A DNA stretch of 64,000 bases from IMGVR_UViG_3300008261_000001:62001-126000; one strand, 5' to 3'; numbered from the stretch's first letter, positions 16,735 through 63,307 are shown. The notes: generated from the letters alone by a model not told the origin. Translations and numbers: made by a program.

Positions 16735-16772
16735 CCTCTGTTAGTCTATTTAGATACAGAGGGGTATAAAAG
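16735..16772 (-). promoter_or_regulatory. CTTTTATA motif plus RBS-occluding hairpin upstream of the giant fibre gene
   Basis: Inverted repeat CCTCTGT (16735-16741) / ACAGAGG (16756-16762) covers the GAGGAG SD; + strand TATAAAAG at 16765-16772. Confidence 0.55.
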
Positions 16773-16811
16773 CACTATTGTGTTTAGTGTGTGGGTTAGA
16801 TAATCTCTTTA

Positions 16812-19800
16812 TTAAGAGACAAGGACTCCGTAGTCTTCTTGAGCGTACACGACAACATCACTGAAGCCTGTTCCGTTCCAATCTGTAGAGAAATCAACAC
16901 CAGGCATAAAGACTGAACTTACCTGTCCATAGTCGATTGTCTCTATGACTCGCCCAAGCACAATAAGGTCGGCTACGGCATTTACATTTTGTTGAGTAGG
17001 TTCGCTTAGTAAGAGTATTTCGTTGGGTGAGGTGCCAACATCATAATCGCTCGCTGTACCCAAGAGTGTGGGTACTAGCTTGTTTAACCCGCCTGCGGTC
17101 GAATACCTTAAAACTTGTTTATCCAATGTGGGGGCTGAGTCCACATCGGTGAGGTCTGAGGTTTGGATAGAGAGGGCTACGCTTATGGTGTTGTTCAAGT
17201 CGTCGTAGCTGAAGTCTAATGAAGTGACTCCCGTATGTGTCCCATTATCGAGGGCTGTGGTCACAAGGCTTCTGACTTGGTCAGCGGTCAGTCCCCCATC
17301 AGGGGTGGATATAATGAAACCACCGAGTCCACCATTAGCAGTTTCGTCCCAAATGATGGTATTTCCATCCTCTATACCTGTTAGGTCAACATCTGAGTGA
17401 AGCCCTATAGAGCCGAGGGCGGTTAGGTTAACACCAGATACAGCGGGCAAACCTGTTGCTCCGAGTACAGGTATTTGTCCATCGGCTGTACCTACATCAT
17501 AGGAGCTGGCTGTACCAAGCCCATCCACTACGCTCTTTATTTGCCCATCGAGAACAAAGTCAGCATTGGATAAACTTGTGGTTGCACCTAAGTAGTTAGA
17601 ACCCACAGGGGTTATGTAAGAACCATCTGTATCTAAGCCTGCTCCAAGTTGCGTATCGTCAATCTCGTTTTGGATATCTGTAAAGGTATCGGATAAGTTC
17701 TTAATCTCTGTGTCCAAGAGAGAGTCAGCGGAGAATAAGCTAGTAGCACCTGCCAAGTAGTTAGAACCTACTGGTGCAGTATAGGTGCCATCCACACCGA
17801 GCCCAGCACCGAGTTGTGTGTCGTCTAACTCGTCTTGTAAGTCTGAGGTAAGGTTATTTAAGTTCGTCTCTAAGCCGAAGAGTGCGTTGTCTAGATTTCC
17901 TAAAGATGTGTGGTGTGATTCGGTGTCGTTTATGAAGTGTGTGGAGGAATAAACGGGTAGTGACCCATCTACACCTACACCTACGGAAAGCTGGGTGTTA
18001 TCTAGCTCTAGTTGTAGACCACCCTCTACACCTGTAGCCCTTAGGATTTCAGCGTCCAAGTTATCCGATACGCTCTTTATTTGACCATCGAGAATCGTAT
18101 CGGCATTGAATAGGCTTGTGGCTATGTTTATGTAGTTGGATGCAAGGGGTGGTGCATAAGTGCCATCTCCATCTAAGCCCGCACCTGTGACAACATTGGA
18201 TAGTTGAGTGCTTATGTTTCCAACATCCGTCTGTGTGTTGGATAGAGAGGTAGCTACATCGAATATGCTCTGGTCGAGAGTGCCTATGGCATCGTGATGA
18301 GATTGCAGATCAGTGATGTAGTTGGTGGCTGTGTAAACAGGTCTGGATGCGTCTACATTCAGCCCAAGAGAAGATAAAGAAGTATCCAATAAGTCGGAGG
18401 TGTTTCCGAGGCTTATGTCGAGGGCGAGGTCAGCACTTGCCAAGCTCGTAGTTAGATCTAAGTAGTTAGAGCCTACAGGGACGATGTAAGAGCCATCGGT
18501 GTCTAAGCCTGCACCCTCTTGAGTCGCATCGAGTTCAGCTAAAGCCCCGCCTGTTGCGTTATTGACGGCAGTATCCAATAAGGACAGAGCCTCGTGGTGG
18601 GAAGTGCCGTTGGGTAGGTAGAAGTTAGAGGTGTAATCAGGTAATGACCCATCAGCGTTTAAGCCCAAAGAAGTCTGTGTGTTATCAAGCTCTAGCTGAA
18701 TATCCCCCTCTACATCTGTTGCTCTGTTAATCTCATTCAGCAGAGCGGTATCGAGAGCTTTAATCTCGGTGTCCAATAGGCTATCCGCATTGAACAAGCT
18801 CGTGGCGAGCCTTATGTAGTTGGATGCCCCATCTGCTGTGTATGTACCATTAGCGTTTAAGCCAGCACCACCTTGTGTGTTATCTAGTTCTAGCTGTAGA
18901 TCTCCCTCTACACCTGTTGCCCTTAGTATTTCTGCATCTAGGTTATCCGATACTCCCTTAATGGCTCCATCTAAAGCAAAGTCTGCATTGGATAAACTCG
19001 TGGTAGCCCCTAAGTAGTTAGAACCGACAGGAGTTATGTAAGAACCATCCGTATCTAAGCCCGCCCCCTCTTGCGTGTCATCTAGTTCTAGCTGTAGATC
19101 TCCCTCTACACCAGTAGCTCTGAGGATTTCAGCATCTAGGTTATCCGATACTCCCTTAATAGCTCCATCAAGGGTCGCATCGGCATTGGATAAACTTGTA
19201 GTTGCTCCTAAGTAGTTAGTGCCTACAGGGACTAAATAAGAACCATCTGTATCCAAGCCAGCACCAGATTGGGTGTTATCAAGCTCTAGCTGTGCGTCAG
19301 ATAGGGCAGAAGATCTGACCCAGTTAGTTCCGTTCCATGCTAGGACTTGACCCGCAACAGAGGGATCCGTTGTATCAACATCGGATAGTGCGTTAATGGA
19401 TAAGTCTCGTACCCATTCGGTCGTAGCGACTAGGCTTGAGTCTTCAGCAGAGGGTGGGGTAAGAGCCGAGATTGTACCAGTGGTTGAAAGAGCGGAAGCA
19501 CCAAAGGTTATTGTGTTATTGGCGGATAGTATAGACCCAGCGGAGAGGGTTAGTTGAGCTGGGTCTCCTACGCCTATTAGAGCAGAGGTTGAGGCTTTGA
19601 GGGTGGATAGATTTAAGGGTTGGAGGGTGGGGTTGAGGGGAGAAAAATCGATTGTGTCGTCATTAGCGTTGGGGGCTGTTGTGAGGAAGTACTCATTAAC
19701 GCCCTCGTCCCAATAGAACGCGGCAGGGTCTTCGGTAGAGCCTCTTGTAAAGATAAAGCCTGTGTCTGTAGAAGCGTTGGGGTCAGCATCGGCTCCGTTG

Positions 19801-22800: not shown

Positions 22801-23939
22801 GAGAGGTTTGTGGAGGCGAGGGTAACAACGGCTGATATTTCAGAGTTATCATCGTCATAAGTCCAAGTGACCCCCCCTCCATTGACAAACATAGCTCCGA
22901 CGAAGTCTTCTATTTCCTCTTGGGTGAACCCTCCCCCACCGCCTGCTTCGTCAGCTTGAGTGATGACTCCGCCTACGACCTTGAGGATCTTTCCATTTAC
23001 TAAAGCTCCGCCTAGATTGACATCTGATAGATCGTCAATAGAGGCGTTTGAAGGTAAGAAATCCCCAGTGTCTGCTTGAGAAGCCGACCCCAAGTTGAGT
23101 GCGGTTATTTCTTGTTGTACGAAAGCGGTTGTAGCTAGGAGGGTCGAGTTATCGGCTAGGGGTTGAGTCGTTGCTCTAGTGTTACCTGTGAAGGTTTGGT
23201 TCGCATTGAGAAGAGGAATATTGGCACTATTGGATAAGTCTGTGGACGCTATAGAGACAACAGCAGATATTTCAGAGTTGTCGTCATCATAAGTCCAAGT
23301 GACTCCTCCGCCATTGACGAACATAGCTCCAACAAAATCTTCTATTTCCTCTTGGGTGAACCCACCCCCACCTCCGGCAGGGTCTGCTTGTGTAATGACA
23401 CCGTCAACGACCTTGAGGATCTTTCCATTTACTAAAGCCCCACCCAAATCAACATCAGAGAGGTCATCAATAGAGGCGGTAGAGGATAAGAAATCTGTGG
23501 TGTCTGCTATAGAGGCAGAGCCTAGTCCGAGATTGGAGCGGGCGGAGGCTTGTGCTACTGCACCTGCTGTGGCGATTTCGGATAGGTTATTAGCTTTGAG
23601 CAGTAGAGAGGTGAGTGCTGTAGTGGCTGTGGAGGACAAGCCGAGGTTGGCTCGTGCGTTGGCTTGAGCTTGAGCCCCTTCATCTGCGAACTCGGATAAG
23701 TAGTTCGAGGCGATGAGATAACCAACGGGGTTAGAGCCATCTATAGTGCCAACCTCGTCTACAGCCACCTGCATGGCTGTGTTCACTTCTACAGGGTAAG
23801 TTCCGTTCCAAGTCACACCATTTCTACGGACATTTCCAATAGACACATACCCGTACTGATCCCTAGTGACGGTGAATGTAAAACGCCCAACAGGGGTGAC
23901 TACAAGGTATTGTAGGGAGACTGATTGCTGTATAGCCAT
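16812..23939 (-). CDS. Giant repetitive tail fibre/virion protein, about 2375 aa
   Basis: ATG 23939 follows GGAGG (preferred over track start 23954); DLSDV-type repeats, about 143-aa and about 60-aa repeat arrays, and an NGTTTTINT..TRGSTEDPA module shared with 8749-16725. Confidence 0.75.
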   Translation of the reverse strand: MAIQQSVSLQYLVVTPVGRFTFTVTRDQYGYVSIGNVRRNGVTWNGTYPVEVNTAMQVAVDEVGTIDGSNPVGYLIASNYLSEFADEGAQAQANARANLGLSSTATTALTSLLLKANNLSEIATAGAVAQASARSNLGLGSASIADTTDFLSSTASIDDLSDVDLGGALVNGKILKVVDGVITQADPAGGGGGFTQEEIEDFVGAMFVNGGGVTWTYDDDNSEISAVVSIASTDLSNSANIPLLNANQTFTGNTRATTQPLADNSTLLATTAFVQQEITALNLGSASQADTGDFLPSNASIDDLSDVNLGGALVNGKILKVVGGVITQADEAGGGGGFTQEEIEDFVGAMFVNGGGVTWTYDDDNSEISAVVTLASTNLSDTANLARLDANQTFTGNTRVSNQPLADNSSLVANTAFVQQEINALNLGSASQADTGDFLASNASIDDLSDVNLGGALINGKVLKVVGGVLTQADEAGGLDAEQVQDLVGGMLVDGGGVTWTYDDDNAQISAVVSLASTDLSNSANIALLDANQTFTGSVRATTQPLADNSTLLASTAFVQQEITALNLGTASQADTGDFLASNASIDDLSDVDLGGVLVNGKVLKVVGGVITQADDLEGLDAEQVQDLVGAMFTDNQAGNSGITFTYDDDNALLNASVSLSLDDLSDVQVNLPLAGHVLVHNGLGQFTNRELSSTDLSNSADLALLDSPVFVGVPEAPTAPLGTNTAQLATTEFVQQEITALDLADTYQPLNARLTDLSIIAPTAGNFIVGDGANLVSQDPSQVRTTLNLDGLYQPLDATLSSIATLGTGADKIIYSVGVDTWAESDITAFGRSLIDDTDVATARATLELEPGVDVQAFNLNLNSISTLGTGADKLIYTTGVNTWAEANLTTFARSLLDDADAPAVRTTLGLGSASLSNTTDFLASSAGLDDLSDVQVNLPLVGHVLVHNGLGQFTNRLLASTDLSNTANIALLDANQTFTGSVRVTTQPLADSSTLIATTAFVQQEITALNLGTASQADTGDFLSSSLITLAGVPGGVPLVDGQTLVYDLANNTFRNKSLSSLDLSDTANIARLNANQTFTGNVDFFGGDITADTPDLTAVGREVATASFVRSLIAGAGGVTQLDDLTDVKITGPLVGQTLKYTGVANGFENASLSSSDLSDVGDLLTTSSSIDDLSDVDTTTTPPALGQVLTWSAGNLWTAQNAPSTYTDNQAIDAVGVALEASAHTGISFDHDPLNHTISASVSLSIGDLSDVDLGALEEFQVLVQDNTGNFVNRVLSTSDLSNGDLVVLSDVAGDVEITGDLSIIGAITSTAQGHTLADISISDGSITSLSAAINFGANNLTTTGTITTQNLVVNGTTTTINTESLSVTEPIIRLANGADADPNASTDTGFIFTRGSTEDPAAFYWDEGVNEYFLTTAPNANDDTIDFSPLNPTLQPLNLSTLKASTSALIGVGDPAQLTLSAGSILSANNTITFGASALSTTGTISALTPPSAEDSSLVATTEWVRDLSINALSDVDTTDPSVAGQVLAWNGTNWVRSSALSDAQLELDNTQSGAGLDTDGSYLVPVGTNYLGATTSLSNADATLDGAIKGVSDNLDAEILRATGVEGDLQLELDDTQEGAGLDTDGSYITPVGSNYLGATTSLSNADFALDGAIKGVSDNLDAEILRATGVEGDLQLELDNTQGGAGLNANGTYTADGASNYIRLATSLFNADSLLDTEIKALDTALLNEINRATDVEGDIQLELDNTQTSLGLNADGSLPDYTSNFYLPNGTSHHEALSLLDTAVNNATGGALAELDATQEGAGLDTDGSYIVPVGSNYLDLTTSLASADLALDISLGNTSDLLDTSLSSLGLNVDASRPVYTATNYITDLQSHHDAIGTLDQSIFDVATSLSNTQTDVGNISTQLSNVVTGAGLDGDGTYAPPLASNYINIATSLFNADTILDGQIKSVSDNLDAEILRATGVEGGLQLELDNTQLSVGVGVDGSLPVYSSTHFINDTESHHTSLGNLDNALFGLETNLNNLTSDLQDELDDTQLGAGLGVDGTYTAPVGSNYLAGATSLFSADSLLDTEIKNLSDTFTDIQNEIDDTQLGAGLDTDGSYITPVGSNYLGATTSLSNADFVLDGQIKSVVDGLGTASSYDVGTADGQIPVLGATGLPAVSGVNLTALGSIGLHSDVDLTGIEDGNTIIWDETANGGLGGFIISTPDGGLTADQVRSLVTTALDNGTHTGVTSLDFSYDDLNNTISVALSIQTSDLTDVDSAPTLDKQVLRYSTAGGLNKLVPTLLGTASDYDVGTSPNEILLLSEPTQQNVNAVADLIVLGRVIETIDYGQVSSVFMPGVDFSTDWNGTGFSDVVVYAQEDYGVLVS
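17500..19300 (-). repeat. Intragenic array of at least 7 ELDxTQxGAGLxxDGSY..NYL units
   Basis: Recurrent (A)GTAGTT(A)G..CCATC..AAGCC blocks near 17590, 17755, 18130, 18460, 18820, 19012 and 19210. Confidence 0.8.
22000..23500 (-). repeat. Intragenic tandem repeat of about 430 bp, about 3.5 copies
   Basis: ASIDDLSDVxLGG..TQAD..MFVNGGGVTWTYDDDN..TTAFVQQEI unit; TCAATAGA(G/A)GC anchors near 22182, 22603, 23035 and 23466. Confidence 0.85.
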
Positions 23940-24128
23940 GACTCGAACCTCCAAAAGATTGGATACTTTAAGGGGTGTTCATCATTAAAAGATTATTGTT
24001 TCTTATAGGTGTATGTAGTTCTGCCCCCTCCAGAGTGTTGTTGATGTAGTCCGAGTGTCGATTATCGACCAAGAGGGGGGGGGTTAATACATACAAATAC
24101 TTAGCTTAAAAGAGAAAGGTGGGGTAGT

Positions 24129-25118: not shown

Positions 25119-25187
25119 TTCTGAAGGGAGCTGATGGGGTGGATTTTATAAGTGTGAACTGCACCAATCGATCCTAAGGAGGAAGAA

Positions 25188-27279: not shown

Positions 27280-27282
27280 ACT

Positions 27283-28165: not shown

Positions 28166-28233
28166 ATTATCCCAACTCTCTTTGAGTCTTATTATTGGGT
28201 AAGTGTTAAGACCCATTCTCAAAGGAGTCTCCC

Positions 28234-32802: not shown

Positions 32803-33216
32803 ATGTTTAAGAACTATCATTGGACAGTGGTCGAAGCTGAAAATGCTTGTACGGGTTTTAAGCTCGCCAAACAAAGCGACAACACCTTCGAGAACTTCAA
32901 CCGATACTATATCGTCAACCCCAACACACAAATCCTTTTTGAGGAAATCGAGTACTTGATCGAGAGTACAAAGGACACCCGCTCCCCATCTCGGTCTCGC
33001 TCCTGTTGTTGCTTTGTCCTTCAAGGAAATAAGTACTTCTTCTATGTCAAGAAGTCCTCCTTAGTCAAAGCGGACAAGCTGTTTATCCAAAACATCGGCA
33101 GGATACTGCATGGAGGTGGCGACTTAACCGAGGACGACTTAAATAAGCTCGCTTCCTCTGTACAGAGGCTCAAGGCTTCCCTTAAAAGCACACCCAAGAA
33201 AGCGGATGGTCGATGA
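32803..33216 (+). CDS. Hypothetical protein
   Basis: 137 aa; its stop overlaps the first MTase module start (ATGA). Confidence 0.6.
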   Translation: MFKNYHWTVVEAENACTGFKLAKQSDNTFENFNRYYIVNPNTQILFEEIEYLIESTKDTRSPSRSRSCCCFVLQGNKYFFYVKKSSLVKADKLFIQNIGRILHGGGDLTEDDLNKLASSVQRLKASLKSTPKKADGR

Positions 33217-41010: not shown

Positions 41011-41110
41011 CAGAGTAGGGTAGTGGATATAATGGGGGGGGTAGGGTAAGTGGTGGATATAATGGGGTAGATAGTGGTGGTGGATATAATAGGGTATCTA
41101 TATAAGGGGT
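41011..41110 (+). promoter_or_regulatory. Tandem array of promoter-like GTGGATATAAT(G/A)GGG units
   Basis: TATAAT at 41028, 41058 and 41085, each followed by a G-run, plus TATATAAGGGG at 41099; directly upstream of the SbcC N-half gene. Confidence 0.6.
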
Positions 41111-42278: not shown

Positions 42279-42802
42279 ACTTTGAGTGGGTTCCCATCAT
42301 CGTCAAACATACGCTCGATGTCGTAAGAACCGTCTTCGGCTAACTTAACCGACCATAGGTCTTTGGTCGCCTTATGGACTAATACGGCATCGTCGTTAGC
42401 GAACATAGAGTGAGCCATAAGGGAGGGACCACTAAGGATAACAAAGTGGTCGTCTATGGATGCGACCCTCTTAGAAACGACTTGTAAGAACTCTGAGGGG
42501 ATGCGGTCTATCTTCGCACCCCTACCATCGAACTTTACAAATACCTCTCCACCCATAGAGGTGACCTCGCCTGAGGCTGTCCTCACCGCCACAACCGTTC
42601 CCTTAGTGCCACTCATGGGAACTTGTGTGGGGATCACTACGCCATTGTTGGTGTAAACGGCTACCCGAGTTCCCTCTTTGAAGTTAATCCGTTTAGCTTT
42701 CCGACCTGTATCTGTAAGGTCAGAAATCTTGGTGTTCAACACCGCGTCCATGCTAGAGGTCTTGGCGTTCCCATAGAAGGTAATCTCGTCATCGTCCCAC
42801 AT
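42275..42802 (-). CDS. Hypothetical protein with an SH3/KOW-like core and RTAS/RVAS motifs
   Basis: FKEGTRVAV..GTKGTVVAV..VFVKFDG; preceded by an RBS-occluding hairpin. Confidence 0.7.
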   Translation of the reverse strand: MWDDDEITFYGNAKTSSMDAVLNTKISDLTDTGRKAKRINFKEGTRVAVYTNNGVVIPTQVPMSGTKGTVVAVRTASGEVTSMGGEVFVKFDGRGAKIDRIPSEFLQVVSKRVASIDDHFVILSGPSLMAHSMFANDDAVLVHKATKDLWSVKLAEDGSYDIERMFDDDGNPLKV

Positions 42803-42804
42803 GG

Positions 42805-42846
42805 TATCTCTCCTTATGTGTCATTCCATAAGGCTGAGATATAAAG
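42805..42846 (-). promoter_or_regulatory. CTTTATA motif plus RBS-occluding hairpin
   Basis: TATCTCTCCTTATG (42805-42818) pairs with CATAAGGCTGAGATA (42827-42841; one bulge/mismatch), covering AAGGAG 2-10 nt before the ATG. Confidence 0.6.
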
Positions 42847-42873
42847 GGTTTATTGAGAGACCCTTAAAGCACA

Positions 42874-42923
42874 AAGCCCCAGCCCCCTTTAGCCTTTGTG
42901 AGGGCGTTAAGGGGCTGGGGCTT
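42874..42923 (-). terminator. Probable intrinsic terminator after the SSB-like gene
   Basis: 13-bp inverted repeat AAGCCCCAGCCCC / GGGGCTGGGGCTT; on the minus strand it runs into TTTGTGCTTT. Confidence 0.6.
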
Positions 42924-43694: not shown

Positions 43695-43828
43695 AGCAGT
43701 CACTCCTTGTATGAGGGTTAAGAGCGTTAGCAAGTCATTCGTATGATAGGCTCATCGCTCACCTAACCCTTATAAAATCTCACCCTCACTCTAAGGGTTT
43801 TTTTAAGTTTTTTCTGCCCCCCCCCAAA

Positions 43829-45043
43829 CTATCCATTATTCTCCTCTTTTACCTTAGCTTCATATTCAGCCTGAGCCTGAGCCGCCTCCGCTTCCCATCG
43901 TGCTCCCTCTTCTTGTCTCTTTCTAGCCTCTGCTTCCCAATCTTGTGCTCTGCTTTGTTGGTTCTTTTTACGCCTCTGCTCTTTCTCATACTCTTTCTGT
44001 AGCCTTTTAGCTTCACGCTCCGCCGCCTCTTGAGCTATTTGACGAGCTAGGGCTTCCTCCCTGGCTTTAGCTTCTTCTTCTTCCTTAAGCCTCTTCTGAT
44101 TATTCTCATGTAGGGCTTTATTTTGCTCATCACTAAGGATTTCTAGTGGGTCGCAGTTCACCTCGTCAGACTGACCATAAGGAACAATAGACTTAATAAA
44201 AATCCCCTCAAGTCGCCACTTATGCTCTTTGATTATCTCATTAACTATCCTTCTCCTTAGTTCCGCACTTTGGCTGTTTCTCTCTCTACCCCTAGCGAAG
44301 TTCTCTAATAAAGGTAGCTTCTTAATAGTTATGGTGTTCTCACTACCCTCTTCTTTTAGCTCAATGTCTTTATCCAAGTACTTCTTTAAGTCTGAGTCGT
44401 TCGTGTGGATGTTGGACTCCAAGATAATCAAAATCGTAAGCCCCCCATGCTCTATGGTTATTTTGTTGTAACTCTCTTGGCTAACACCGAAGTATCCTTT
44501 GGAAGTCCACAATGACTTCACTAAAGCCAGTTGCACACTATCTTCATCTTTGAAGAAACTTCCGATTGCCTTAACCACCGTGTCTTCTGAGATACTCCTA
44601 AGATCCATCCTCCATTGTGTATGCCTATTAAACTCCAAAGGTACGACACCTGCCCTACCAAACCTAAAGCTCTCCTCATAGGTTTTGTAAGCCGCATATT
44701 CAATATCTTCGTTATATATGGCTTTTATGCCGTCCTCAGTAATTATTGCTGGGCTGTTATTAAGGGAAGTCACGAGCTTGTTATAATCTTGCCTTTGCCT
44801 ATTCAACAGCCTGTCTAGATGGTCTGGGTGTACACGCATTGCTCGGCTAATCGCCACGCAAGGGCCACCGCTACCTAAGGGGGGGGTTAGGTCGGCTTGT
44901 CTCTCCAACATCGCCACTCTCTGCATAAGACGCTCTATTTGAGCGGCGAGCTTATCTGTAGAGGCAACCCTAGAAATCTTATTCTGAGCCACAAGGGAAG
45001 CTATCTTCCTTTGTGCTACGCGGACAATCATAAATCTATCCAT
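43829..45043 (-). CDS. Hypothetical protein with RVAS/KIAS-rich N-terminus, DUF4258-like segment and charged coiled-coil tail
   Basis: FNRHTQWRMDLRSISEDTV resembles the HAxxRMxxRxI pattern; E/K/R/Q-rich C-terminus. Confidence 0.7.
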   Translation of the reverse strand: MDRFMIVRVAQRKIASLVAQNKISRVASTDKLAAQIERLMQRVAMLERQADLTPPLGSGGPCVAISRAMRVHPDHLDRLLNRQRQDYNKLVTSLNNSPAIITEDGIKAIYNEDIEYAAYKTYEESFRFGRAGVVPLEFNRHTQWRMDLRSISEDTVVKAIGSFFKDEDSVQLALVKSLWTSKGYFGVSQESYNKITIEHGGLTILIILESNIHTNDSDLKKYLDKDIELKEEGSENTITIKKLPLLENFARGRERNSQSAELRRRIVNEIIKEHKWRLEGIFIKSIVPYGQSDEVNCDPLEILSDEQNKALHENNQKRLKEEEEAKAREEALARQIAQEAAEREAKRLQKEYEKEQRRKKNQQSRAQDWEAEARKRQEEGARWEAEAAQAQAEYEAKVKEENNG

Positions 45044-45050
45044 TTTCAGC

Positions 45051-45090
45051 TCCTTCTATGAGTTATCCTAAATGTAACCTCATAAAAGGA
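45051..45090 (-). promoter_or_regulatory. CTTTTATG motif plus RBS-occluding hairpin
   Basis: TCCTTCTATGAGTTA (45051-45065) pairs with TAACCTCATAAAAGGA (45075-45090; one bulge, one wobble), covering AAGGAG. Confidence 0.6.
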
Positions 45091-45129
45091 TAATACACCC
45101 CCCACCAAAGAGCTAGTATCCACCTCCCA

Positions 45130-46116: not shown

Positions 46117-46154
46117 GGTAGCTCTCCTAGAGCCTTATTATAACATAAAACCCA

Positions 46155-47585: not shown

Positions 47586-47660
47586 GGGGACTCCGTTTAT
47601 AGATGGGTCGGTTCAATCCTATAGTATAGGGACTCACACACTAGTTCATAAGGAGAACTG

Positions 47661-48905: not shown

Positions 48906-49421
48906 ATGAAAGAACCTGCATGGGTCACATTAGAGATAACACCACGCGGTGAAGAGGAAGCAAGAGCTGGAAGGTTGAGAAGCCTCCTCTCAAATAGAAG
49001 TCCATTTAAAGAGGAGGACATCTATATCCCGATCATTAGGTCGGGGAAAGACCCAGTTTTTTTACTTGAGGGGTACATATTCATAAAGTGGGGGTATCCA
49101 ACAAGCGACTATGTGCATCTGAAACGCACACCGTGGATATCGGGTTTAATGGCGAGGATTGACCCAAGAACGGGTCTTATCAGTAGCGGTGTGCTAAAGG
49201 ATAAAGACCTAAAGGCAATGGTCAAGAGGGCAGATAACATGGGGGGCAAGTTTCAGATAGGGGACTTGGTGGAGATAAAGTCTGGTGAGATGAAGGGGTT
49301 CTCTGCCATTGTGATGGATTGGTGGATGAACGAAGAGGGTTTAAGAAGCTATACGCTCCTTATTGAGTTACGGAGCGTAGAGGTTGTCTTATCCGTCGAT
49401 TGCCTATCTTTGGAGGGGTGA
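48906..49421 (+). CDS. NusG/RfaH-like transcription factor
   Basis: NGN-like N-terminus (IYIP..EGYIFI) plus KOW motif FQIGDLVEIKSGEMKGFSAIV. Confidence 0.75.
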   Translation: MKEPAWVTLEITPRGEEEARAGRLRSLLSNRSPFKEEDIYIPIIRSGKDPVFLLEGYIFIKWGYPTSDYVHLKRTPWISGLMARIDPRTGLISSGVLKDKDLKAMVKRADNMGGKFQIGDLVEIKSGEMKGFSAIVMDWWMNEEGLRSYTLLIELRSVEVVLSVDCLSLEG

Positions 49422-49422
49422 T

Positions 49423-49992
49423 ATGGACTCTAAGTTAATGGAAAGATTGTTTTCATCTGAACAGGGGTTGCACACACTACCCACTGCACCAGAGGAGCTA
49501 TCCGAGGAAGCAAAGGGTCAGTTAGCGACTATAATAGAGAACATGGGGCGAATATCTCCCTTAGAAGCTGATCTGTTGGAGATGTATTTGCTCAAAGGGG
49601 TCAGTCAGGCAACTCTTGGTAAGATTTTTCAGTACACCCAACCGAATATCCATTACAGAATAAATAGGGGTTTACAGAGGCTCCGTGTGTTTGTAAGCAT
49701 ACGAATCTACACAGAGGAAGAGCTAAGGAAACGCTTATCCACTTTTTTCACCGACACAAAAGACATAGAGGTAATGACGCTCATTTATGTACACTCTAGT
49801 CAGAGCTTGGTAGCCCGTATGATAGGTGAGTCACAAGGTAAAGTTAGATATCGTTACCTCAAGTGCATAAAGGCACTCGAACAAGCTCCATCGCTTCAAG
49901 ATGTGTATCTAACCCTCAAGTCCATAGGTGACAATATCACCCTACTGAGAAAACACAAAGACGACGACCTTGAGAAGAAGGTCATATTATGA
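49423..49992 (+). CDS. Tandem sigma-70 region 4-like HTH protein
   Basis: ATG 49423 after GGAGGGG; two units, ISPLEADLLEMYLLKGVSQATLGKIF..RGLQRL and VMTLIY..SQSLVARMIG..KCIKAL. Confidence 0.65.
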   Translation: MDSKLMERLFSSEQGLHTLPTAPEELSEEAKGQLATIIENMGRISPLEADLLEMYLLKGVSQATLGKIFQYTQPNIHYRINRGLQRLRVFVSIRIYTEEELRKRLSTFFTDTKDIEVMTLIYVHSSQSLVARMIGESQGKVRYRYLKCIKALEQAPSLQDVYLTLKSIGDNITLLRKHKDDDLEKKVIL

Positions 49993-50246: not shown

Positions 50247-50296
50247 CTTTTAGTTTATTTATGATAGCCGACCCCTAGACACATCTTTCACATGGG

Positions 50297-53200
50297 GTGC
50301 TTCATATGCTTTTCCTAAGAAATAAAAACAGATCGGTGGTTCCCTTTAAGGGGGAGCTGTTCAAGATGATAGAGACGAAGTTCTCTAGGATTCCAGTCTT
50401 GAACGCTATGGGTCAGCAGATAGTGGATCCTTCCACCAAGAAGGTCAAGACGACAAAAGCTGAAGAAGTGACGATGCCCTTTTTCGTCTATAACTCTCTT
50501 GTGTCCTTAGACGAGTATGTCATGGGCAAAATGGAGCAACTAGAGGCGGATAAGGATAGGAAAAGGGTTAAGTCAGACTTAACGACTAAGTTCGCTGCGT
50601 CTTGGCGGTTTATACTTCGTAGGTGGACGGTGACCGCCCCCAAAGGCATGAGGGACAACTGCGTTAAGATCGAAAGATTTATCGAAGCACTCGACAACGA
50701 AATGGAAAACCTTATCAACGATAGGAATACCCCCTTCACAGAGAAGGTTAAAGCCATCAAAGATTATGCGAAGAGTACCGAGGGCAAAAAGCTCATGGAG
50801 CTTTACTGCGACTTCATGCGTAATGTGTTTCAGACCTTCGGCATGGTCGTGGCAGTATCCATTAAGGTCAATAACAGAGTCGGTGTAAGATATCTTCAGT
50901 TCAAGCTCGGCTCTCAAGTAGAGGCTATGCTTGAGGAAGCAAGCAACTCTGAAAAGGTTCGTATCGAACGAGCCATGAAGATGACCGAACTTCGTGATCT
51001 CAAGCTCAAAGCCCAAATGGATAACATGGGCTATGTTGTTGAGTCTATGCCCGTCTACGGAGATGGGGATAAACCCATCTTCGCCCTCGTAGCGTACGAC
51101 CCCGCATACAAGCAAATCCCCGTACCCAAAGTCCCCACAAGGGTAAAAGTAAGTGACGAGGAAAAGAAGCTCATTAAAGAGCTTTATCCCAACGAACAAG
51201 GGCTTTATTCAGTACTCCCCCCTAGAGCCACAAAGGAAGACAGGGATAGGCTTTTGGAAAGGATTGAGTTCCTTAAAGAAGAGATTAAGGATCAAATAGG
51301 AAAGTCACAAAAATTCTATCTCCCTGGTTATGGGATAAAACCTGATGGGACACCAGAGAAAACGGATAAAAACGGCAAGCCTATTTACAAGTACATAAAT
51401 ACAGAAACTGAACGCAGAAAAGCCGCTAGAGCCGCTAAAGCACTAGAAAAACTGCAATACAATATGAGCCTTCAGCTCTCTTCCAATGTAACCAAAGAAA
51501 TCAAAGATCAATACAGAAGGGCTATAGAGCCTTACATCAAGGGCATATACCACCCCAACTTCACCACAAACCTCGGCAACGAGTACGAGTACTTCCCCTC
51601 GCTACAAGCCTTAAAGGATAAAATAGCAGTACAACAAGCCTCTAGTACTGCTATTCAAACCGTACTCGTCCCTGAGTTCCAAACACAGAAGGTCAATGTG
51701 CCTAACTATCCTGTTTGGGATGATGTCACGCAGAAGATTAAGTATGAGTCCAAAGATCTCACTGTACCCGTGATAACAATCGGACCAAACAACACCGCAG
51801 TACCCCACTACGCAACAGAGCTTGCTAGTGTGAACTACGAAAAAGACGAAATCGTCACTAGAGAGATCAGGGACTTCGGTGAATCCCAAGTCGTAGGTAG
51901 TGGGATTTCTCGCTCTGTAGAGACAAAGCAGATAGTAGTAAACGGCTCACCAAAGTCTCTCATCGTAAAGGGTCGCTATGCAGGCTATCTCTTAGAACAC
52001 ATCGTTAACCTTGAGGGTAAGTTCATCGAGGGTGGGTACATCAACAAGGTTGGTGGAGATAACAAGACGGTCTCCCTCCTTGAAGACCGCATGATTGTTA
52101 AGGACGGAGTAGTACAGACCATAGACTACTTAGCGGACAATAAGGTACGCCAACGCTTAATCGAGCCTTATGTGACCCTCACAGAAGATGGGCAGTCGCT
52201 CTTGTTGGGTCTCCCTGGATCATCCCCTCGTGGGATAAATCTCGACCATAGCATAATGGATAAACTATCCAAAAAGGTAGCCACTATTGAGAAGGTGATC
52301 AATAAGGATATACCAGAGTCTCACTCATGGCATAGGTCTCGTAACCCTTACTACACCTTCAAGGTTGAAGACTTTGAGCTAGTTCGTAAGAGCCTCGGTT
52401 CTGTTGGTGTGAGCAAGCCAGCCTCCGACTTCATTGACGCTTATTTCAATAAGCTCAAAGCACAAGAGGCGGCGATGGCTGTAGAAAACCTAGAACGCTT
52501 CACCCCAGCGTCTCTAGGTGGCTTCGTTAAGCAAACGGATAGAGGCCCGTTTAGGTTCAACAATAAGCAACTCGAAGCCCTTGCTTGGATCGACTCCGCT
52601 GAAATGAAGGGTGTAGTCGGTCTAGACACAGGTGTAGGAAAGACGGTGACGGCTCTCGCCGCCATCAAGAACGCCATAAACCAAGAGATGTACGAGGGGC
52701 TACCTAAGCGTAAGTTCCTATTCGTATCGCCTGCTCGTCTTGTGGGCAACCTCAAGAAAGAGATAGATGCCTACATGGATGAGGGTGGTGAAGAAGTCAC
52801 TCTCGCTGACGGCACTAAGGATGTGTCTCCAAACTGGCGTAAGATACTCAACGACCGCGTGGTCGAGATGTCTTATGACAAGTACACGGAAACTTTCCAA
52901 GATTTCGGTGGGCAGTTCGCCTCCACAGAAGAGGGTTCTAAGCTACTGGAAGAGTTATCCGTTCTAGAGAGAGAAATACAGCTACAAGGTCGTCCCGTTG
53001 ACCCTAACAACCTAGAGGGCGAAAAGCACCCCACCCTAAGCGATAAGCAACTAGAGGCTAAGAAAAAGCTCATCAAAGAACTCAAGAAGCAAATCCGTCT
53101 GCTTCAAAAGGCACTCGTGGTGGAGAGTTATCCTAAAGCGGATAAGTATTTCCAAAAGGAGTTCTATGCCTGCTTCTTTGACGAGGTGAACGAAGCCCTT

Positions 53201-55882: not shown

Positions 55883-55884
55883 AA

Positions 55885-56166: not shown

Positions 56167-56168
56167 TC

Positions 56169-56954: not shown

Positions 56955-57034
56955 TGTACTCGCCCCTCCTGCTAGGGTTTAGGTGTAGGTCAGCCCTATT
57001 ATATAAAGCTCAACCCTCAACCCCACCAAAATCC

Positions 57035-57898
57035 CTACACACCCACCTCTTTAGCCGTTAAGTGTCCATTTTTGTACAGCCAATAAAGCTGAAGACCTAG
57101 CGTTGGAATAATCAGAGCGTTCCAACCTATCTGTAAAGACTTCATCACCCAACCTCCAGGGATACCAGGGAACATCAGCGTCACCAAGAACCCAAGCCCG
57201 CTCTCAGGTAATGACGCAAGCAACTCCCCCCATGAGATCATCCCTAGAAATCCCTTTAGGATATCCGTGATCTTCCAACTCACCTCCGTCACATTTATCC
57301 AGATTATCCAAAATATGTAGGCTTTAGCGGGAGTGGTTAAAGCGGACAATAAGGGGTTCGCCTCTAAGAACTTAGTCATCCAATCCGTCAGAGAGCGTGT
57401 GCCTTTGGTGAGCTTGCCCACATAAGCTGAAACAGCGGATCTCTTTTCCTCTGGTAGCTTCTTTATGAGGTCTGTCACTAAGGAGGTAAGCGTAGGGGCG
57501 TTGTTAGCGTAGGCAAAGAAAAACCTAACGAACGCATACTTGTCCTCTAAAGATTTCTTCTTTGAATCTATCCATTTTTTCCCCTCGTCCAAGAACTTCT
57601 CGAACTTGGTGGATAGCTCTTTGTAGAGGCTCAAAACATTCGTAGATGTGATGCCGAGCATCTCTTTGAACTGCTCCCACAGCTTAGGTGCTTTTTGGAA
57701 GCCTTGATAGATTTCTTTAATCTTTGAGACAAGCCCTTTGATACTCGCCCGCTTAACCGAACCTTTGAGGATTTGGTTTCCAAAGGGGATGAGGGTAATC
57801 TCGTTCAGTTCTTGGCGAACCAAATAAGCAGAGGCTGTACGAACTCTTGGGGATGTCCTTACAGCCTCTCTACAGGCAAAAGAGATTGTAGATCTCAT
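57035..57898 (-). CDS. Hypothetical protein with RTAS N-terminus and hydrophobic C-terminal helices
   Basis: YIFWIIWINV, LGFLVTLMFPG and WNALIIPTLGLQLYWLY hydrophobic stretches suggest membrane insertion. Confidence 0.7.
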   Translation of the reverse strand: MRSTISFACREAVRTSPRVRTASAYLVRQELNEITLIPFGNQILKGSVKRASIKGLVSKIKEIYQGFQKAPKLWEQFKEMLGITSTNVLSLYKELSTKFEKFLDEGKKWIDSKKKSLEDKYAFVRFFFAYANNAPTLTSLVTDLIKKLPEEKRSAVSAYVGKLTKGTRSLTDWMTKFLEANPLLSALTTPAKAYIFWIIWINVTEVSWKITDILKGFLGMISWGELLASLPESGLGFLVTLMFPGIPGGWVMKSLQIGWNALIIPTLGLQLYWLYKNGHLTAKEVGV

Positions 57899-57940
57899 AG
57901 TGGGTTATCCTATCTGTTTAAGGATAACCCACTATAAAAG
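57897..57940 (-). promoter_or_regulatory. CTTTTATA motif plus a perfect 15-bp hairpin occluding the RBS and start codon
   Basis: ATAGTGGGTTATCCT (57897-57911) / AGGATAACCCACTAT (57921-57935); the minus-strand 3' arm includes AGGA and the AT of ATG. Confidence 0.7.
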
Positions 57941-57976
57941 ACTTACACAAGATAAGGGGTGTTGATCAAAAGCTAA

Positions 57977-58306: not shown

Positions 58307-58373
58307 ATAAAACCTCGTTTAAGTGCGGTAACTTACACCCCTTTATATAGGAAAGGGGGTTTAGAACACCGCC

Positions 58374-58796: not shown

Positions 58797-58919
58797 AGCT
58801 GTCTTATCCTTTGTAAGTGGGGTGAAAAACACATGGGCAACAAAATATAAACGAATAAAAATCATCCCAACCCTGGTTATCCATTATTAGTGAGGAGAAC
58901 CAACAGCTAGGAGAGCTAA

Positions 58920-59186: not shown

Positions 59187-59207
59187 AGAGGAGCTAGGGG
59201 GGTAGGG

Positions 59208-59822
59208 TCACTCAGAGTAAACGATCTCGCTCTCCACAGAGACTAAGAGAGACACCACTAGGGTATTCCTCTCTTTCTTAGCGGAGAGGTTCACCACCTC
59301 TAGTTCGGTCGTTATGTCTTGGATATCCAATCCACGAACCTCGTAGTTGAGTTCGAGCTTGGTGGCTTCTATGAGGTCTTGCTCTACGCTAGAGAGCTTA
59401 GACTTCACAACCGAGAACAAAGTTTTGGATAGATCTTCATAGCCCATGCCACCGAGTACTAGGGGTGTGCCTAGTACTCTTTCGAAATCACTTCCATCAT
59501 AGACATAGGTGAGAACCATCGAGCCACCTACTACCACTTGATCTGGATAAGGGATAAGCTCAGTCTCTCGTTCTGCTCTGTTGTATCGCTCGATAGAGGC
59601 GTAGCCCTTTTTGGCTTTAAAGTTCGAAGAACCATCTAGGTTAGAACCGAATCCTTGAAGGATTACATTTAGGACTTGATTAGCGACTTTATCGTCTCCC
59701 TCTGTTTGAGGGAAAACAGCATGGACAGGCTTTAGGTCTAAAGCCGCCCTACGAGTCATTCCGCTTTCGAGGCGGGCGACTCTCACCTCTAGACTTCTCA
59801 ATACTTCACTTGCTGTTCTCAT
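59208..59822 (-). CDS. Hypothetical protein with an MRTASEV..RVARLE leader
   Basis: 204 aa; leader shared with 58374-58796. Confidence 0.75.
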   Translation of the reverse strand: MRTASEVLRSLEVRVARLESGMTRRAALDLKPVHAVFPQTEGDDKVANQVLNVILQGFGSNLDGSSNFKAKKGYASIERYNRAERETELIPYPDQVVVGGSMVLTYVYDGSDFERVLGTPLVLGGMGYEDLSKTLFSVVKSKLSSVEQDLIEATKLELNYEVRGLDIQDITTELEVVNLSAKKERNTLVVSLLVSVESEIVYSE

Positions 59823-59871
59823 TTATAACCCCTTAGGTGAATCTTATTGTATCCACCTAAGGGGTTATAAA
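59822..59871 (-). promoter_or_regulatory. CTTTATAA motif plus a perfect 18-bp hairpin occluding the RBS
   Basis: TTTATAACCCCTTAGGTG (59822-59839) / CACCTAAGGGGTTATAAA (59854-59871); the stem ends at the A of ATG. Confidence 0.72.
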
Positions 59872-59883
59872 GAGACTATAAAC

Positions 59884-62800: not shown

Positions 62801-63255
62801 AGACCGTTAAGATCCACCATAACATCAAGACAAGCATTGCTAACCCCAATCAAAGCTACTTGAGTCGGCTTATCTGTAAAAGCTGACTTCAAAAGAGGCT
62901 GACGAGTTTTAAACCAACCAAAAACACTCTTATAAACACGGCTTACAGCCACCACACGCTTTATCGTGACTTGTGGCGTCCCGACCAACCTAGATAAATA
63001 AGCCACTAAACGAGGCTTACTCTTTAAACCGTCAAACGCCTGCCCCTCAAGCAAACTTAAAATAGACTTCTCAGTTTCGAGAAACTCCTCTTTGAAACGC
63101 CTCAAGAGAGCCTCCGCATCTCCCATTAAAGCAGAAACATCGACACCGCTCTCTACAGAAAGCTCCTCAACAGCCCTAACAGCTAGAGAAAACTTGATTA
63201 AATCAGCTTGAAGCCTTGTCTCAGGCAAGGGTCCAGTAGCGGTCTTTACTCTCAT
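59884..63255 (-). CDS. UvrD/PcrA-like SF1A helicase with an N-terminal extension of about 260 aa
   Basis: LTPEQ, AAGAGSGKT, THS, VDEAQD, GDDKQAIYEFRGA, NFRS, RTNA, TMHAWKGLE and ERRLAYVAITR. Confidence 0.9.
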   Translation of the reverse strand: MRVKTATGPLPETRLQADLIKFSLAVRAVEELSVESGVDVSALMGDAEALLRRFKEEFLETEKSILSLLEGQAFDGLKSKPRLVAYLSRLVGTPQVTIKRVVAVSRVYKSVFGWFKTRQPLLKSAFTDKPTQVALIGVSNACLDVMVDLNGLLLVERASKAQSIGKWIADACALLEQANPVEQSLRDIREVAKLAGEIKSLDARIRAGGLPEGEQIKMLQNREVLYDKLLDMTKGSEDRQALLAEAGRVINTNTSFQTRTGEIQRLTPEQEEAMMVTGKSIIAAGAGSGKTRVLASKIAYTINELGASPDQIIATTFGKEASNELKSRASKYSNGASDSGRFIGSTTHSISHKICTDSGFLRGVELMSESKAEAWMKAAIEQVMLYHPASNTPPLVRPFINLALAAAPLQSMSVQVDQAAGNTQQVDELKRLLIETARVIGEKAIWAINNNMSWGRGDLDKIRPSIQNIDNRGNITFLPPSSPIWDDRGFRDTVNALITTNRGQNSIQKAGPFPGFTGKFASFPPFGKPEPVGQWFNIGYEREDVLSKDQKVSDYMKEIGIYMADMVSPTELWSGGNGGAVAAVYGAYMYFKTREKLADYDDLLVWANKSLVENPSKLRSMQAAYKYIFVDEAQDLNKAQHTLFGLIAGHINPETLQPYGDGRMTADTYCFIGDDKQAIYEFRGAQPEEFINISDAYNGEFKTSVLRTNFRSGRNIVQAANKLIAHNTKQIPMVCNPTPTKEEGRITSEDHINTSTPQSPGAVEVAKEISEIIEIEGWSHQNGEQHKFGIGCRTNAELTGYAFELLVAGVPYFCKRDLMNTATMLAPVHLMSVRSNNPVYKLEAVKMAHKHLLFYIDSQFNASLDEQARHAGQHPLDFLVNGGWRSLYPSSQTKRLSNAKAYADALKSIMDFEGTNSELIDFVCRNIRGLDGKNLLERTGENLSAAEIDDLSRETESGEVTLDDMAQYAESGTRVVHRVFEKRTLEDGLTFFFELKKQSKTMADKSNEEGGRNKNSVFLGTMHAWKGLECRDMYLPMTNGYFPDPRSDIESERRLAYVAITRGQDRVKILYGPDRNPSDRGNKGKGGPSPFISEACIQPEISLDTRTASVSFMEAMREFLRSN

Positions 63256-63263
63256 AAGTAGCT

Positions 63264-63307
63264 CCTATGTGTGCTTAGATTATCCAAACACACATAGGGT
63301 TATAAAC
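63264..63307 (-). promoter_or_regulatory. GTTTATAA motif plus RBS-occluding hairpin
   Basis: CCTATGTGTG (63264-63273) / CACACATAGG (63289-63298) covers TAGG of the TAGGAG SD. Confidence 0.65.

What the first reader, a model, noticed from the sequence alone, without database searches (positions are those of the whole stretch)
16735..63307. Six RBS-sequestering hairpins, each with a TTTAT(A/G) motif at the 5' end: a candidate late-gene translational lock
Seen: upstream of the minus-strand genes starting at 16725, 42802, 45043, 57898, 59822 and 63255, the coding strand reads (C/G)TTT(T)AT(A/G) at or just before the 5' arm of a 7-18 bp inverted repeat whose 3' arm holds the SD and reaches or nears the ATG. 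There is no downstream U-tract, so these are not typical terminators. Weaker candidates lie at about 23940-23995 and 50256-50305. Established: T4 late genes (e, soc, 49, I-TevI) are silenced on early read-through mRNA by SD-occluding hairpins and freed when a late promoter starts transcription inside the stem. Inference: TTTATR is this phage's late promoter core. An alternative is DNA hairpin promoters for a phage RNA polymerase, as in N4.
Basis: partly seen in the sequence, partly recalled or inferred. Interest (0 to 1): 0.8.

Follow-up and report, generated by a model that had tools for sequence, protein, structure and literature searches.

The report
Promoter-embedded hairpins that mask ribosome sites
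In a 290-kb uncultured freshwater phage, six genes carry strong RNA hairpins that hide the ribosome-binding site, and each hairpin's first arm holds a phage promoter-like motif, as in phage T4's known translational locks, though these genes are not shown to be late genes.

Summary
All six leaders fold far better than shuffles (z -3.4 to -8.1, 0/200). Three of them are the three longest inverted repeats in the 64-kb window.

TTTATA is the most enriched hexamer upstream of genes (10 of 33 regions; 0.7 expected). It faces the gene and lies 33-65 nt before the ATG.

Over about 100 kb of this phage, strong leader hairpins occur in 6/20 motif-bearing leaders and 2/84 others (p=5e-4).

The hairpins go with one motif subtype, TAN-N4-TTTATR. 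That subtype is conserved in relatives sharing only 47-56% UvrD identity. A G-rich-upstream subtype before clamp, clamp-loader and SbcD genes has no hairpins.

The anti-SD segment lies inside the motif or within about 10 nt after it. In four hairpins the motif itself pairs with the start codon, so a transcript starting 6-8 nt downstream would be unlocked.

Best reading: a T4-style lock that silences read-through mRNA (confidence about 0.5).

The "late gene" label is not supported. One locked gene is a UvrD helicase, and relatives lock RNR. TTTATR is a general promoter core here, and T4's TATAAATA is not enriched.

The N4-type reading is rejected. No transcription start data exist.

The parts
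16723..16777 (-). Leader of the 2658-aa Mtd_N/structural gene (8749-16725). Motif TAGTGC-TTTTATA at 16765-16777. Inner stem 16756-16762 / 16735-16741. Outer stem 16772-16777 / 16725-16730. SD GAGGAG at 16733-16738 sits in the 3' arm.
   Evidence: z -3.6, 0/200
42800..42852 (-). Leader of the 175-aa gene (42275-42802). Motif TAAACCC-TTTATA, with TTTATA at 42840-42845. Outer stem 42836-42841 / 42805-42810. Inner stem 42827-42833 / 42812-42818, which covers AAGG of the SD.
   Evidence: z -3.7, 0/200
42866..42922 (-). Canonical terminator-like hairpin: a 12-bp GC-rich stem (42909-42922 / 42875-42890) followed by a T-rich tail. It lies between the upstream gene and the 42845 motif.
   Evidence: read directly from the sequence; not tested further
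45041..45093 (-). Leader of the 404-aa gene (43829-45043). The whole TTTATG motif (45081-45086) lies inside the 5' arm (45079-45089), which pairs with 45052-45062 and covers GAAGG of the SD. This hairpin can form only in RNA that starts upstream of the motif.
   Evidence: z -3.4, 0/200
57896..57945 (-). Leader of the 287-aa gene (57035-57898). Motif TAAGTC-TTTTATA, with TTTATA at 57933-57938. A perfect 15-bp repeat (57921-57935 / 57897-57911) extends by G-U pairs, so UUUUAUA pairs with UAUGAGA (the start codon).
   Evidence: z -8.1; second longest inverted repeat in the window
59820..59882 (-). Leader of the 204-aa gene (59208-59822). Tandem TTTATA copies at 59877-59882 and 59866-59871. The 21-bp arms (59851-59871 / 59822-59842) include the whole second motif. 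The SD AAGGGG and the bases up to the AUG are paired.
   Evidence: z -7.9, -36.3 kcal/mol; longest inverted repeat in the window
63253..63324 (-). Leader of the UvrD-type helicase gene (59884-63255). Three TTTATA copies at 63319-63324, 63312-63317 and 63301-63306. The 16-17-bp hairpin (63282-63298 / 63264-63280) covers TAGG of the SD TAGGAG.
   Evidence: z -5.4; third longest inverted repeat
25145..25150 (+). TTTATA with a G-rich upstream flank, 43 nt before the ATG of the 87-aa gene that precedes the sliding-clamp gene. No hairpin.
   Evidence: (z about 0)
43771..43776 (-). TTTATA with a G-rich upstream flank, 43 nt before the start of gene 42963-43733. No hairpin.
   Evidence: z +0.7
46144..46149 (-). 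TTTATG with a G-rich upstream flank before the SbcD-like gene (45130-46116). No hairpin. Its transcripts would read into the locked 45043 leader.
   Evidence: z -0.3
47596..47601 (+). TTTATA before the clamp-loader gene (47661-48887), in a divergent intergenic region. No hairpin.
   Evidence: z -0.6
57002..57007 (-). TTTATA with a G-rich upstream flank before gene 56169-56954. No hairpin.
   Evidence: z +0.4
23934..23995 (-). This is the leader of the 2380-aa tail-fibre gene, whose likely true start is the ATG at 23939. It has a TAATCT-TTTAATG variant of the motif in a divergent intergenic region and no significant hairpin.
   Evidence: z -0.6
50251..50311 (+). TAGTTTA-TTTATG, identical to the relatives' consensus, lies before the 1858-aa SNF2 gene. 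The fold is weak and not significant.
   Evidence: z -1.5, 17/200
49384..49992 (+). Gene for a 202-aa protein with a Sigma70 region-4 domain. It is a candidate phage promoter-specificity factor, given as context and not shown to act on these sites.
   Evidence: PF04545, 31.1 bits against a cutoff of 24.1

Best explanation
These are T4-style promoter-in-stem translational locks. TAN-N4-TTTATR is a promoter of this phage clade. It is probably read by the host's multi-subunit RNA polymerase with a phage factor.

At six genes in the window, and at least one more in the same genome, the DNA that carries this promoter and the next few bases also encodes the 5' arm (the anti-SD) of a hairpin. The 3' arm of that hairpin is the SD and start codon.

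Long transcripts that read in from the co-directional gene upstream contain both arms, so the gene on them is translationally silent. Transcripts started at the gene's own promoter begin inside or beyond the 5' arm, cannot form the lock, and are translated.

The effect is to make expression of these genes depend on their own promoter alone. This insulates them from read-through, and gates them in time if that promoter class is timed.

Shown here: the hairpins, the motif, their coupling and their geometry. Inferred: that the motif is a promoter, where transcription starts, and that read-through occurs. The temporal class is unknown.
For: 1. Hairpin strength and rank.

2. The motif behaves like a promoter.
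- It is the top upstream hexamer: 10/33 regions against 0.69 expected.
- Half of all copies lie in the 4% of the window that is intergenic.
- It faces the gene and lies 33-65 nt from the ATG, five times at exactly 43 nt.
- The extended form TAG-N4-TTTAT is conserved upstream of many genes in marine relatives with 53-56% UvrD identity, and in a 47% lineage, while the spacer and flanks vary.
- Sigma70-consensus promoters are depleted: 11 found against 22.5 expected.
- A Sigma70_r4 protein is encoded in the window.

3. Hairpins and motif are coupled.
- z<-3 in 6/20 motif-bearing leaders against 2/84 others, Fisher p=5e-4.
- Hairpins go with the low-G TAN-N4 subtype rather than the G-rich subtype, Mann-Whitney p=0.01.

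4. Pairing extends into the motif.
- The whole motif is inside the stem at 45043 and 59822, and in relatives at L005 15532 and L006 18926.
- The motif pairs with the AUG at 57898, 59822, 63255 and L012 2030.
- Three of the six locked genes start ATGAGA, which complements UCUUUUAU. Only 2 of the other 55 genes do (Fisher p about 0.005, my calculation).
- This pairing can act only in RNA started upstream of the motif.

5. What-if folding: a start 6-8 nt after the motif lowers stability and raises P(SD unpaired) from 0.00-0.23 to 0.40-0.64 at all six sites.

6. All locked leaders follow a co-directional gene. The one TA-type promoter in a divergent region (23990) has no hairpin.

7. Parallels elsewhere in the same genome.
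- A homing-endonuclease gene just downstream of the RNR small-subunit gene (PHROG 314, E=1e-15) has an SD-occluding hairpin. This mirrors mobE of phage Aeh1 (PMC2988022).
- One bipartite early-type promoter holds an anti-SD in its spacer.

8. In relatives, the RNR-small leader hairpin keeps pairing through four one-sided changes.
Against: - No transcription start is mapped. The only RNA-run hit is one 224-nt contig that stops at codon 2 of the 204-aa gene, and it is uninformative.
- If transcription starts right after TTTATR, as at T7-type promoters that end in TATA, five of the six hairpins stay in the primary transcript.
- At 42802 and at L012 2030 the anti-SD lies 7-12 nt after the motif, so a +7 start unlocks only partly.
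- A terminator-like hairpin upstream of 42845 would limit read-through there.
- The hairpins are not conserved at orthologous genes. UvrD and the Mtd_N gene in relatives have none.
- No double compensatory change was seen, and near-identical strains gave no variation.
- The subtype split was defined after seeing the data.
Confidence: 0.5

Rival explanations
1. The hairpins are 5'-terminal structures of the primary transcripts. Transcription starts at or immediately after TTTATR, as at promoters of single-subunit phage polymerases that end in TATA. Every mRNA then begins with the hairpin, which stabilises the 5' end and keeps translation constitutively low, or dependent on a helicase, ribosomal protein S1 or a standby site.
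For: - The motif is contiguous and about 13-17 nt long (TTTGTAG-N4-TTTATA in relatives) and ends in TATA.
- With a start at motif end +1, five hairpins remain (-13.5 to -26.6 kcal/mol) and begin within 0-2 nt of the 5' end.
- 5'-terminal stem-loops are known mRNA stabilisers (T7 gene 10 leader, ompA; from my own knowledge).
Against: - The 45043 hairpin disappears entirely under this model (-3.9 kcal/mol).
- The extra pairing of the motif with the AUG or SD at 57898, 59822, 63255 and L012 2030 would have no role.
- Stems of -24 to -27 kcal/mol over the SD would nearly abolish translation of a helicase and other genes.
- No single-subunit RNA polymerase was seen in about 100 kb, whereas a Sigma70_r4 protein and 17-nt-spaced bipartite promoters point to a sigma-dependent polymerase.
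Confidence: 0.25
2. The promoter-hairpin units are mainly recombination cassettes, like the PeSLs of T4-type phages, that mediate gene shuffling. On this reading, SD occlusion is incidental.
For: - In other lake metagenomes, contigs of related strains break or diverge at 57947, 57974 and 59788-59829, at the edges of two of the units. A hypervariable stretch lies at 58799-58917.
- PeSLs are described in PMC2839356 and PMC4122927.
Against: - The hairpin arms share no sequence with each other, so they offer no homology for exchange.
- The order is promoter then stem-loop, with the SD in the stem, whereas a PeSL is a terminator stem-loop joined to an early promoter.
- The breakpoints come from assembly graphs of mixed strains and may simply mark gene boundaries.
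Confidence: 0.08
3. The hairpins are processing sites. The long stems are cut by RNase III, or an endonuclease cuts the AU-rich motif, which frees or destroys the ribosome-binding site, as at the lambda N leader or the T7 early mRNAs.
For: - The 59822 stem has 21-25 bp and the 57898 stem 15-19 bp, near the size RNase III needs.
- The one RNA contig ends 3 nt from the base of the 59822 stem.
Against: - Four of the six stems are 7-16 bp with bulges, too short for RNase III.
- DNA contigs break at the same place as the RNA contig, so its end is probably an assembly branch point.
- This reading does not explain why the motif also occurs without hairpins at a fixed distance from the ATG.
Confidence: 0.06
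4. The hairpins are DNA hairpin promoters for a phage virion RNA polymerase, as in N4.
For: There are inverted repeats next to a conserved motif upstream of genes, and the genome encodes giant proteins.
Against: - The two giant proteins are a tail fibre and an Mtd_N/structural protein with no polymerase domain.
- Stems are 7-21 bp and loops 1-16 nt, with no shared sequence. N4 promoters have a short conserved stem and a 3-nt loop (my own knowledge).
- The same motif works, by position, at many genes with no repeat at all.
- The SD always lies in the 3' arm, which is an RNA-level feature.
Confidence: 0.03

Closest known systems
T4-type translational locks on late genes and homing endonucleases (e, soc, 49, I-TevI, segB; mobE of Aeh1)
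   Same: - A stable hairpin sequesters the SD or AUG.
[quoted passage not shown]
- The gene sits inside a longer co-directional transcription unit.
- A homing endonuclease next to an RNR gene is among the locked genes (PMC3014915, PMC2988022).
   Different: - The promoter motif is TAN-N4-TTTATR, not TATAAATA.
- The temporal class is unknown, and the locked genes include a UvrD helicase and, in relatives, RNR.
- The density is higher: at least 7-8 in about 100 kb.
- The motif often pairs with the start codon itself.
- No transcript ends are mapped.
PeSL promoter/stem-loop cassettes of T4-like phages
   Same: Both are short intergenic units that combine a promoter and a stem-loop, and both lie near strain-level rearrangement boundaries (PMC2839356, PMC4122927).
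   Different: PeSL stem-loops are terminators joined to sigma70-like early promoters, and their sequence is conserved between copies. Here the stem-loop follows the promoter, contains the SD, has no T-tract, and differs in sequence at every site.
N4 virion-RNA-polymerase hairpin promoters
   Same: Both are inverted repeats at promoters of a phage with giant proteins.
   Different: No virion RNA polymerase was found. Stems and loops vary and are long. The SD is in the 3' arm. The same motif also occurs without repeats.
5'-terminal stabiliser stem-loops (T7 gene 10 leader, ompA leader)
   Same: In both, a hairpin lies at or near the predicted 5' end of the mRNA, just after the promoter.
   Different: Those stabiliser stem-loops leave the SD free. 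Here the SD or AUG is the 3' arm, and pairing reaches back into the promoter.

Membership tests
T4-type promoter-in-stem translational lock | A stable RNA hairpin sequesters the SD and/or start codon on long transcripts | tested here: met
   In silico only. z is -3.4 to -8.1 with 0/200 shuffles. P(SD unpaired) is 0.00-0.23 in the read-through form.
T4-type promoter-in-stem translational lock | A promoter lies within or at the 5' arm, so its own transcripts lack that arm | tested here: inconclusive
   The motif is promoter-like by enrichment, orientation, spacing and conservation, and it overlaps or abuts the 5' arm. No transcription start is mapped.
T4-type promoter-in-stem translational lock | The gene lies inside a longer co-directional transcription unit that can read through | tested here: met
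   Shown by gene layout only. All six leaders follow a co-directional gene 61-160 nt upstream. One terminator-like hairpin lies before the 42845 motif. Expression was not tested.
T4-type promoter-in-stem translational lock | The locked genes and the embedded promoter belong to the late class | tested here: inconclusive
   One locked gene is structural, one is a UvrD helicase and four are unknown. Relatives lock RNR-small. Timing cannot be read from the sequence.
T4-type promoter-in-stem translational lock | The promoter is the gp55-type TATAAATA | tested here: not met
   TATAAATA occurs twice against 1.8 expected, and not at these sites.
N4-type DNA hairpin promoter | The phage encodes a giant virion RNA polymerase | tested here: not met
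   Pfam and PHROG scans of the 2658-, 2380-, 1861- and 1123-aa proteins found no polymerase domain. Only about 100 of 290 kb was examined.
N4-type DNA hairpin promoter | A short conserved stem with a 3-nt loop and conserved bases | tested here: not met
   Stems are 7-21 bp and loops 1-16 nt, with no shared arm sequence.
Intrinsic (rho-independent) terminator | A GC-rich stem followed by a U-tract | tested here: not met
   No T-run follows any of the six stems, and the terminator scan did not list them.
PeSL cassette | A terminator stem-loop joined to a sigma70-like early promoter, with sequence conserved between copies | tested here: not met
   The order and content differ, the arms are unrelated, and sigma70-like sites are depleted.
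5'-terminal stabiliser hairpin | The hairpin starts within a few nt of the mRNA 5' end | not testable with these tools
   This needs 5'-end mapping. Only assembled contigs of one RNA run were available.
Known RNA families (Rfam) | A match at gathering score | tested here: not met
   No match in the window.

The most novel reading that the evidence does not exclude
A whole clade of uncultured huge phages, freshwater and marine, uses one conserved promoter type (TAN-N4-TTTATR) that is repeatedly built into anti-SD or anti-AUG arms. Dozens of genes per genome would then be translated only from their own promoter. These include helicase, RNR, homing-endonuclease and structural genes. Translational insulation would largely replace terminators as the way to separate transcription units, and even the second codon (AGA) would be selected to pair with the promoter's RNA copy.
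Probability: 0.3. Interest if true: 0.6.

Novelty: new member of a known kind. Interest (0 to 1): 0.45.

Why it matters
Gene regulation in huge uncultured phages is almost unknown, because there is no host and no time course. This work gives three things that can be tested.
- A concrete promoter motif shared by lineages with only about 50% protein identity.
- At least two further promoter types in the same genome.
- A testable rule for which genes are shielded from read-through.

If transcript 5' ends confirm the model, T4's classic lock becomes a general and heavily used device in a distant phage group. The motif could then be used to predict transcription units in metagenomic phage genomes. 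If the ends refute it, these are unusually strong 5'-terminal SD-masking hairpins, which would need another unlocking factor.

Tried and rejected
- Megablast of 22 kb against GenBank phages found nothing. The nearest record is a 485-kb uncultured phage with 51% RecA identity.
- No tRNA genes and no Rfam family.
- Close relatives for covariation:
  - IMG/VR gave only the source contig.
  - A Logan contig and an NCBI MAG contig are identical, or differ only by indels.
  - The metagenome scan gave only relatives with 32-55% identity.
  - One relative had no DNA available.
- RNA evidence: one metatranscriptome holds a single 224-nt contig, and reads were not available, so no start sites could be mapped.
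- Function of the locked genes: the ESM Atlas and relaxed PHROG scans were uninformative for the 175-, 404-, 287- and 204-aa proteins. The 204-aa protein gave only a weak tail-completion/DUF7941 lead.
- T4 late consensus TATAAATA is at chance level.
- Archaeal TATA-box reading of TTTATA, prompted by the only paper hit. I set it aside because the genome has an amidase-type lysin, SD-led genes, a Sigma70_r4 protein and 17-nt-spaced bipartite promoters. It was not formally excluded. A start 20-25 nt downstream would unlock the genes even more completely.
- Terminator reading: rejected, because there are no T-tracts.
- Covariation in the relatives' RNR leader: only one-sided changes in three distinct sequences, so there is no statistical power.


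Full report
WHAT THE WINDOW IS

The window is bases 62001-126000 of a 290,179-bp IMG/VR contig from lake water. Many freshwater metagenomes hold near-identical sequence. It has no close relative among sequenced phages. The nearest GenBank record is a 485-kb uncultured phage.

- Bases 1.5-24 kb, minus strand, encode tail-fibre, baseplate and giant structural proteins.
- Bases 24-64 kb encode DNA-metabolism functions: exonuclease, sliding clamp, PNK-like ATPase, a run of methyltransferase ORFs, RuvC, a UvsX/RecA-like recombinase, SbcC and SbcD, RNase H-like, clamp loader, an 1858-aa SNF2 protein and an 1123-aa UvrD helicase.

All six sites read as described.

- With the folding tool, each leader beats all 200 dinucleotide shuffles. 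The z-scores are -3.6, -3.7, -3.4, -8.1, -7.9 and -5.4.
- Five are the five best-folding leaders of the 60 genes in the window, and the sixth ranks 8th.
- Among 106 leaders from about 100 kb of the same genome they rank 1, 3, 4, 5, 7 and 11.
- The three longest inverted repeats in the entire window are the hairpins at 59822, 57898 and 63255.
- None is followed by a T-tract.
- The two weaker candidates are not better than shuffles.

THE MOTIF IS REAL AND BEHAVES LIKE A PROMOTER

- TTTATA is the most enriched hexamer in gene-oriented upstream regions: 10 of 33 against 0.69 expected. This is more enriched than the SD itself.
- Half of its 32 copies lie in the 4% of the window that is intergenic.
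- It lies 33-65 nt before the start codons, five times at exactly 43 nt.
- Consensus sigma70 promoters are depleted.

The motif is not confined to the six hairpins. It also precedes the gene ahead of the clamp, SbcD, the clamp loader, SNF2, an amidase and others, with no structure.

TWO SUBTYPES

- The hairpin sites have TA(N)-N4 directly before TTTATR and few G bases upstream.
- The structure-free sites have a G-rich flank.
- Hairpin z-score tracks this split (Mann-Whitney p=0.01, Spearman 0.57). I defined the split after looking at the data.

RELATIVES

Marine huge phages whose UvrD is 53-56% identical, and a third lineage at 47%, carry the same motif in clearer form: TTTGTAG or TTAATAG, then four variable bases, then TTTAT. 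It lies 45-75 nt before many start codons. The spacer varies while the two blocks stay, which is the footprint of a recognition site.

Some of these leaders also have SD- or AUG-occluding hairpins that start at the motif:
- the RNR small-subunit gene in four contigs (z about -4);
- a 181-aa gene (z -6.7);
- a 1161-aa gene.

The RNR hairpin keeps pairing through four one-sided changes, but there are no double changes and only three distinct sequences.

Orthologues of the window's UvrD and Mtd_N genes have no hairpin in those phages. The architecture recurs, but its positions do not.

COUPLING AND GEOMETRY

Over 106 genes of this phage, strong leader hairpins (z<-3) occur in 6 of 20 leaders with the motif and 2 of 84 without (p=5e-4). 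A seventh strong case lies outside the window: L012 2030-2566, z -7.6.

- The bases that pair with the SD lie inside the motif or mostly 2-10 nt after it.
- At 45043 and 59822 the whole motif is inside the stem.
- At 57898, 59822, 63255 and L012 2030 the motif pairs with the start codon and second codon.
- Three of the six locked genes begin ATGAGA, the complement of UCUUUUAU with G-U pairs. Only 2 of the other 55 genes do.
- RNA pairing that involves a promoter element can matter only in transcripts that began further upstream.
- What-if folding shows that a start 6-8 nt after the motif frees the SD at all six sites, while a start right after the motif leaves five of them locked.
- Every locked leader follows a co-directional gene.
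- The one TA-type promoter in a divergent region, before the tail-fibre gene, has no hairpin.

MECHANISM

The best fit is the arrangement described for T4 gene e, I-TevI, segB and mobE. There, a -10-only promoter lies in the DNA that encodes the 5' strand of an SD-sequestering structure. Read-through RNA is silent and promoter-initiated RNA is translated (PMC3014915, PMC2988022).

Two further parallels appear in the same genome.
- A homing-endonuclease gene (PHROG 314, E=1e-15) lies immediately downstream of the RNR small-subunit gene and just beyond the window's right end. It has an SD-occluding hairpin (z -2.0).
- One bipartite early-type promoter has an anti-SD in its spacer (z -1.95).

Both of these are only suggestive.

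WHAT IS NOT SUPPORTED

The 'late' label is not supported. TTTATR is a general core, not a late-specific one. The locked genes include a helicase. T4's TATAAATA is at chance. Timing cannot be read from the sequence.

The N4 reading fails on polymerase content and on hairpin form.

LIMITS

- No transcript 5' ends could be obtained. The one RNA hit is a single contig that ends at codon 2 of the 204-aa gene, at a place where DNA assemblies of other strains also break.
- Close relatives for covariation were not found.

I therefore give the lock model about 0.5, a constitutive 5'-terminal hairpin about 0.25, and smaller weights to the cassette, processing and DNA-hairpin readings.

VERDICT

This is a new member of a known kind of control, in a poorly known phage group. 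It comes with a usable promoter motif and a clear experiment that would settle the question.

Noticed in passing
L008 600-8000, L013 5100-9500, L012 3520-3660; window 28167-28205 (+): A second, bipartite promoter type: TTATCC(CAAG), a 17-nt spacer, (C)TTATTAG followed by a G-run, often with an A/T tract upstream. It lies before about a dozen small ORFs of unknown function left of the window. One copy lies in the window, before the 60-aa gene at 28234. It looks like an early class.
   Followed up: partly
window 1106, 1135, 28420, 41101 (+) and 58339-58347 (-): A third upstream motif, TATAA(A)GGG(G): 6 copies against about 1 expected. It lies upstream of genes 1164, 28478, 41133 (SbcC-like) and 57977. 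A related TTTGTATAT form precedes the homing-endonuclease gene and L012 1472.
   Followed up: partly
window 48906-49992 (+): Next to the clamp loader lie a 171-aa protein with weak KOW/NusG-like hits and a 202-aa protein with a Sigma70 region-4 domain above the Pfam cutoff. Together they may form a phage transcription-factor module.
   Followed up: partly
window 33213-38637 (+): A tandem run of about nine short (150-260 aa) DNA-methyltransferase-like ORFs joined by ATGA overlaps. Two C-terminal types alternate, as if a split methyltransferase pair had been amplified about four times.
   Followed up: no
window 57947, 57974, 58799-58917, 59788-59829: In other lake metagenomes, contigs of related strains diverge or break at these points. 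Two of them are at the edges of promoter-hairpin units. A 35-nt piece (59788-59822, the first 11 codons of the 204-aa gene) also occurs in otherwise unrelated contigs.
   Followed up: partly
L009 5432-6505 (window 63318 to beyond 64000, minus strand): The gene upstream of UvrD is a 357-aa homing endonuclease (PHROG 314, E=1e-15; weak GIY-YIG hit). It sits between the RNR small-subunit gene and UvrD. The window's ORF 63318-63992 is only its 3' part.
   Followed up: partly
L009 307-2982: The RNR large-subunit gene just outside the window carries a LAGLIDADG (intein-type) insertion.
   Followed up: no
window 300-350 and 41040-41110; L008 9560-9700: Short direct repeats in intergenic DNA: 2.5 copies of a 16-nt unit before gene 353, two copies of GGTGGATATAAT(R)GGGTA before gene 41133, and three copies of GGGTCTATATG..GGATAAGGG left of the window. 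They could be binding sites or iterons.
   Followed up: no
whole window: The heptamer TGGATAA/TTATCCA occurs 100 times against about 8 expected by size. Copies are found on both strands. When on the coding strand, they are mostly in one reading frame (33 of 41).
   Followed up: partly
window 31433-32800 (+) and 30495-31403 (-): A GroEL-like chaperonin gene and an amidase-type lysin gene are arranged head to head. The lysin's TTTATA motif lies inside the chaperonin coding start.
   Followed up: no
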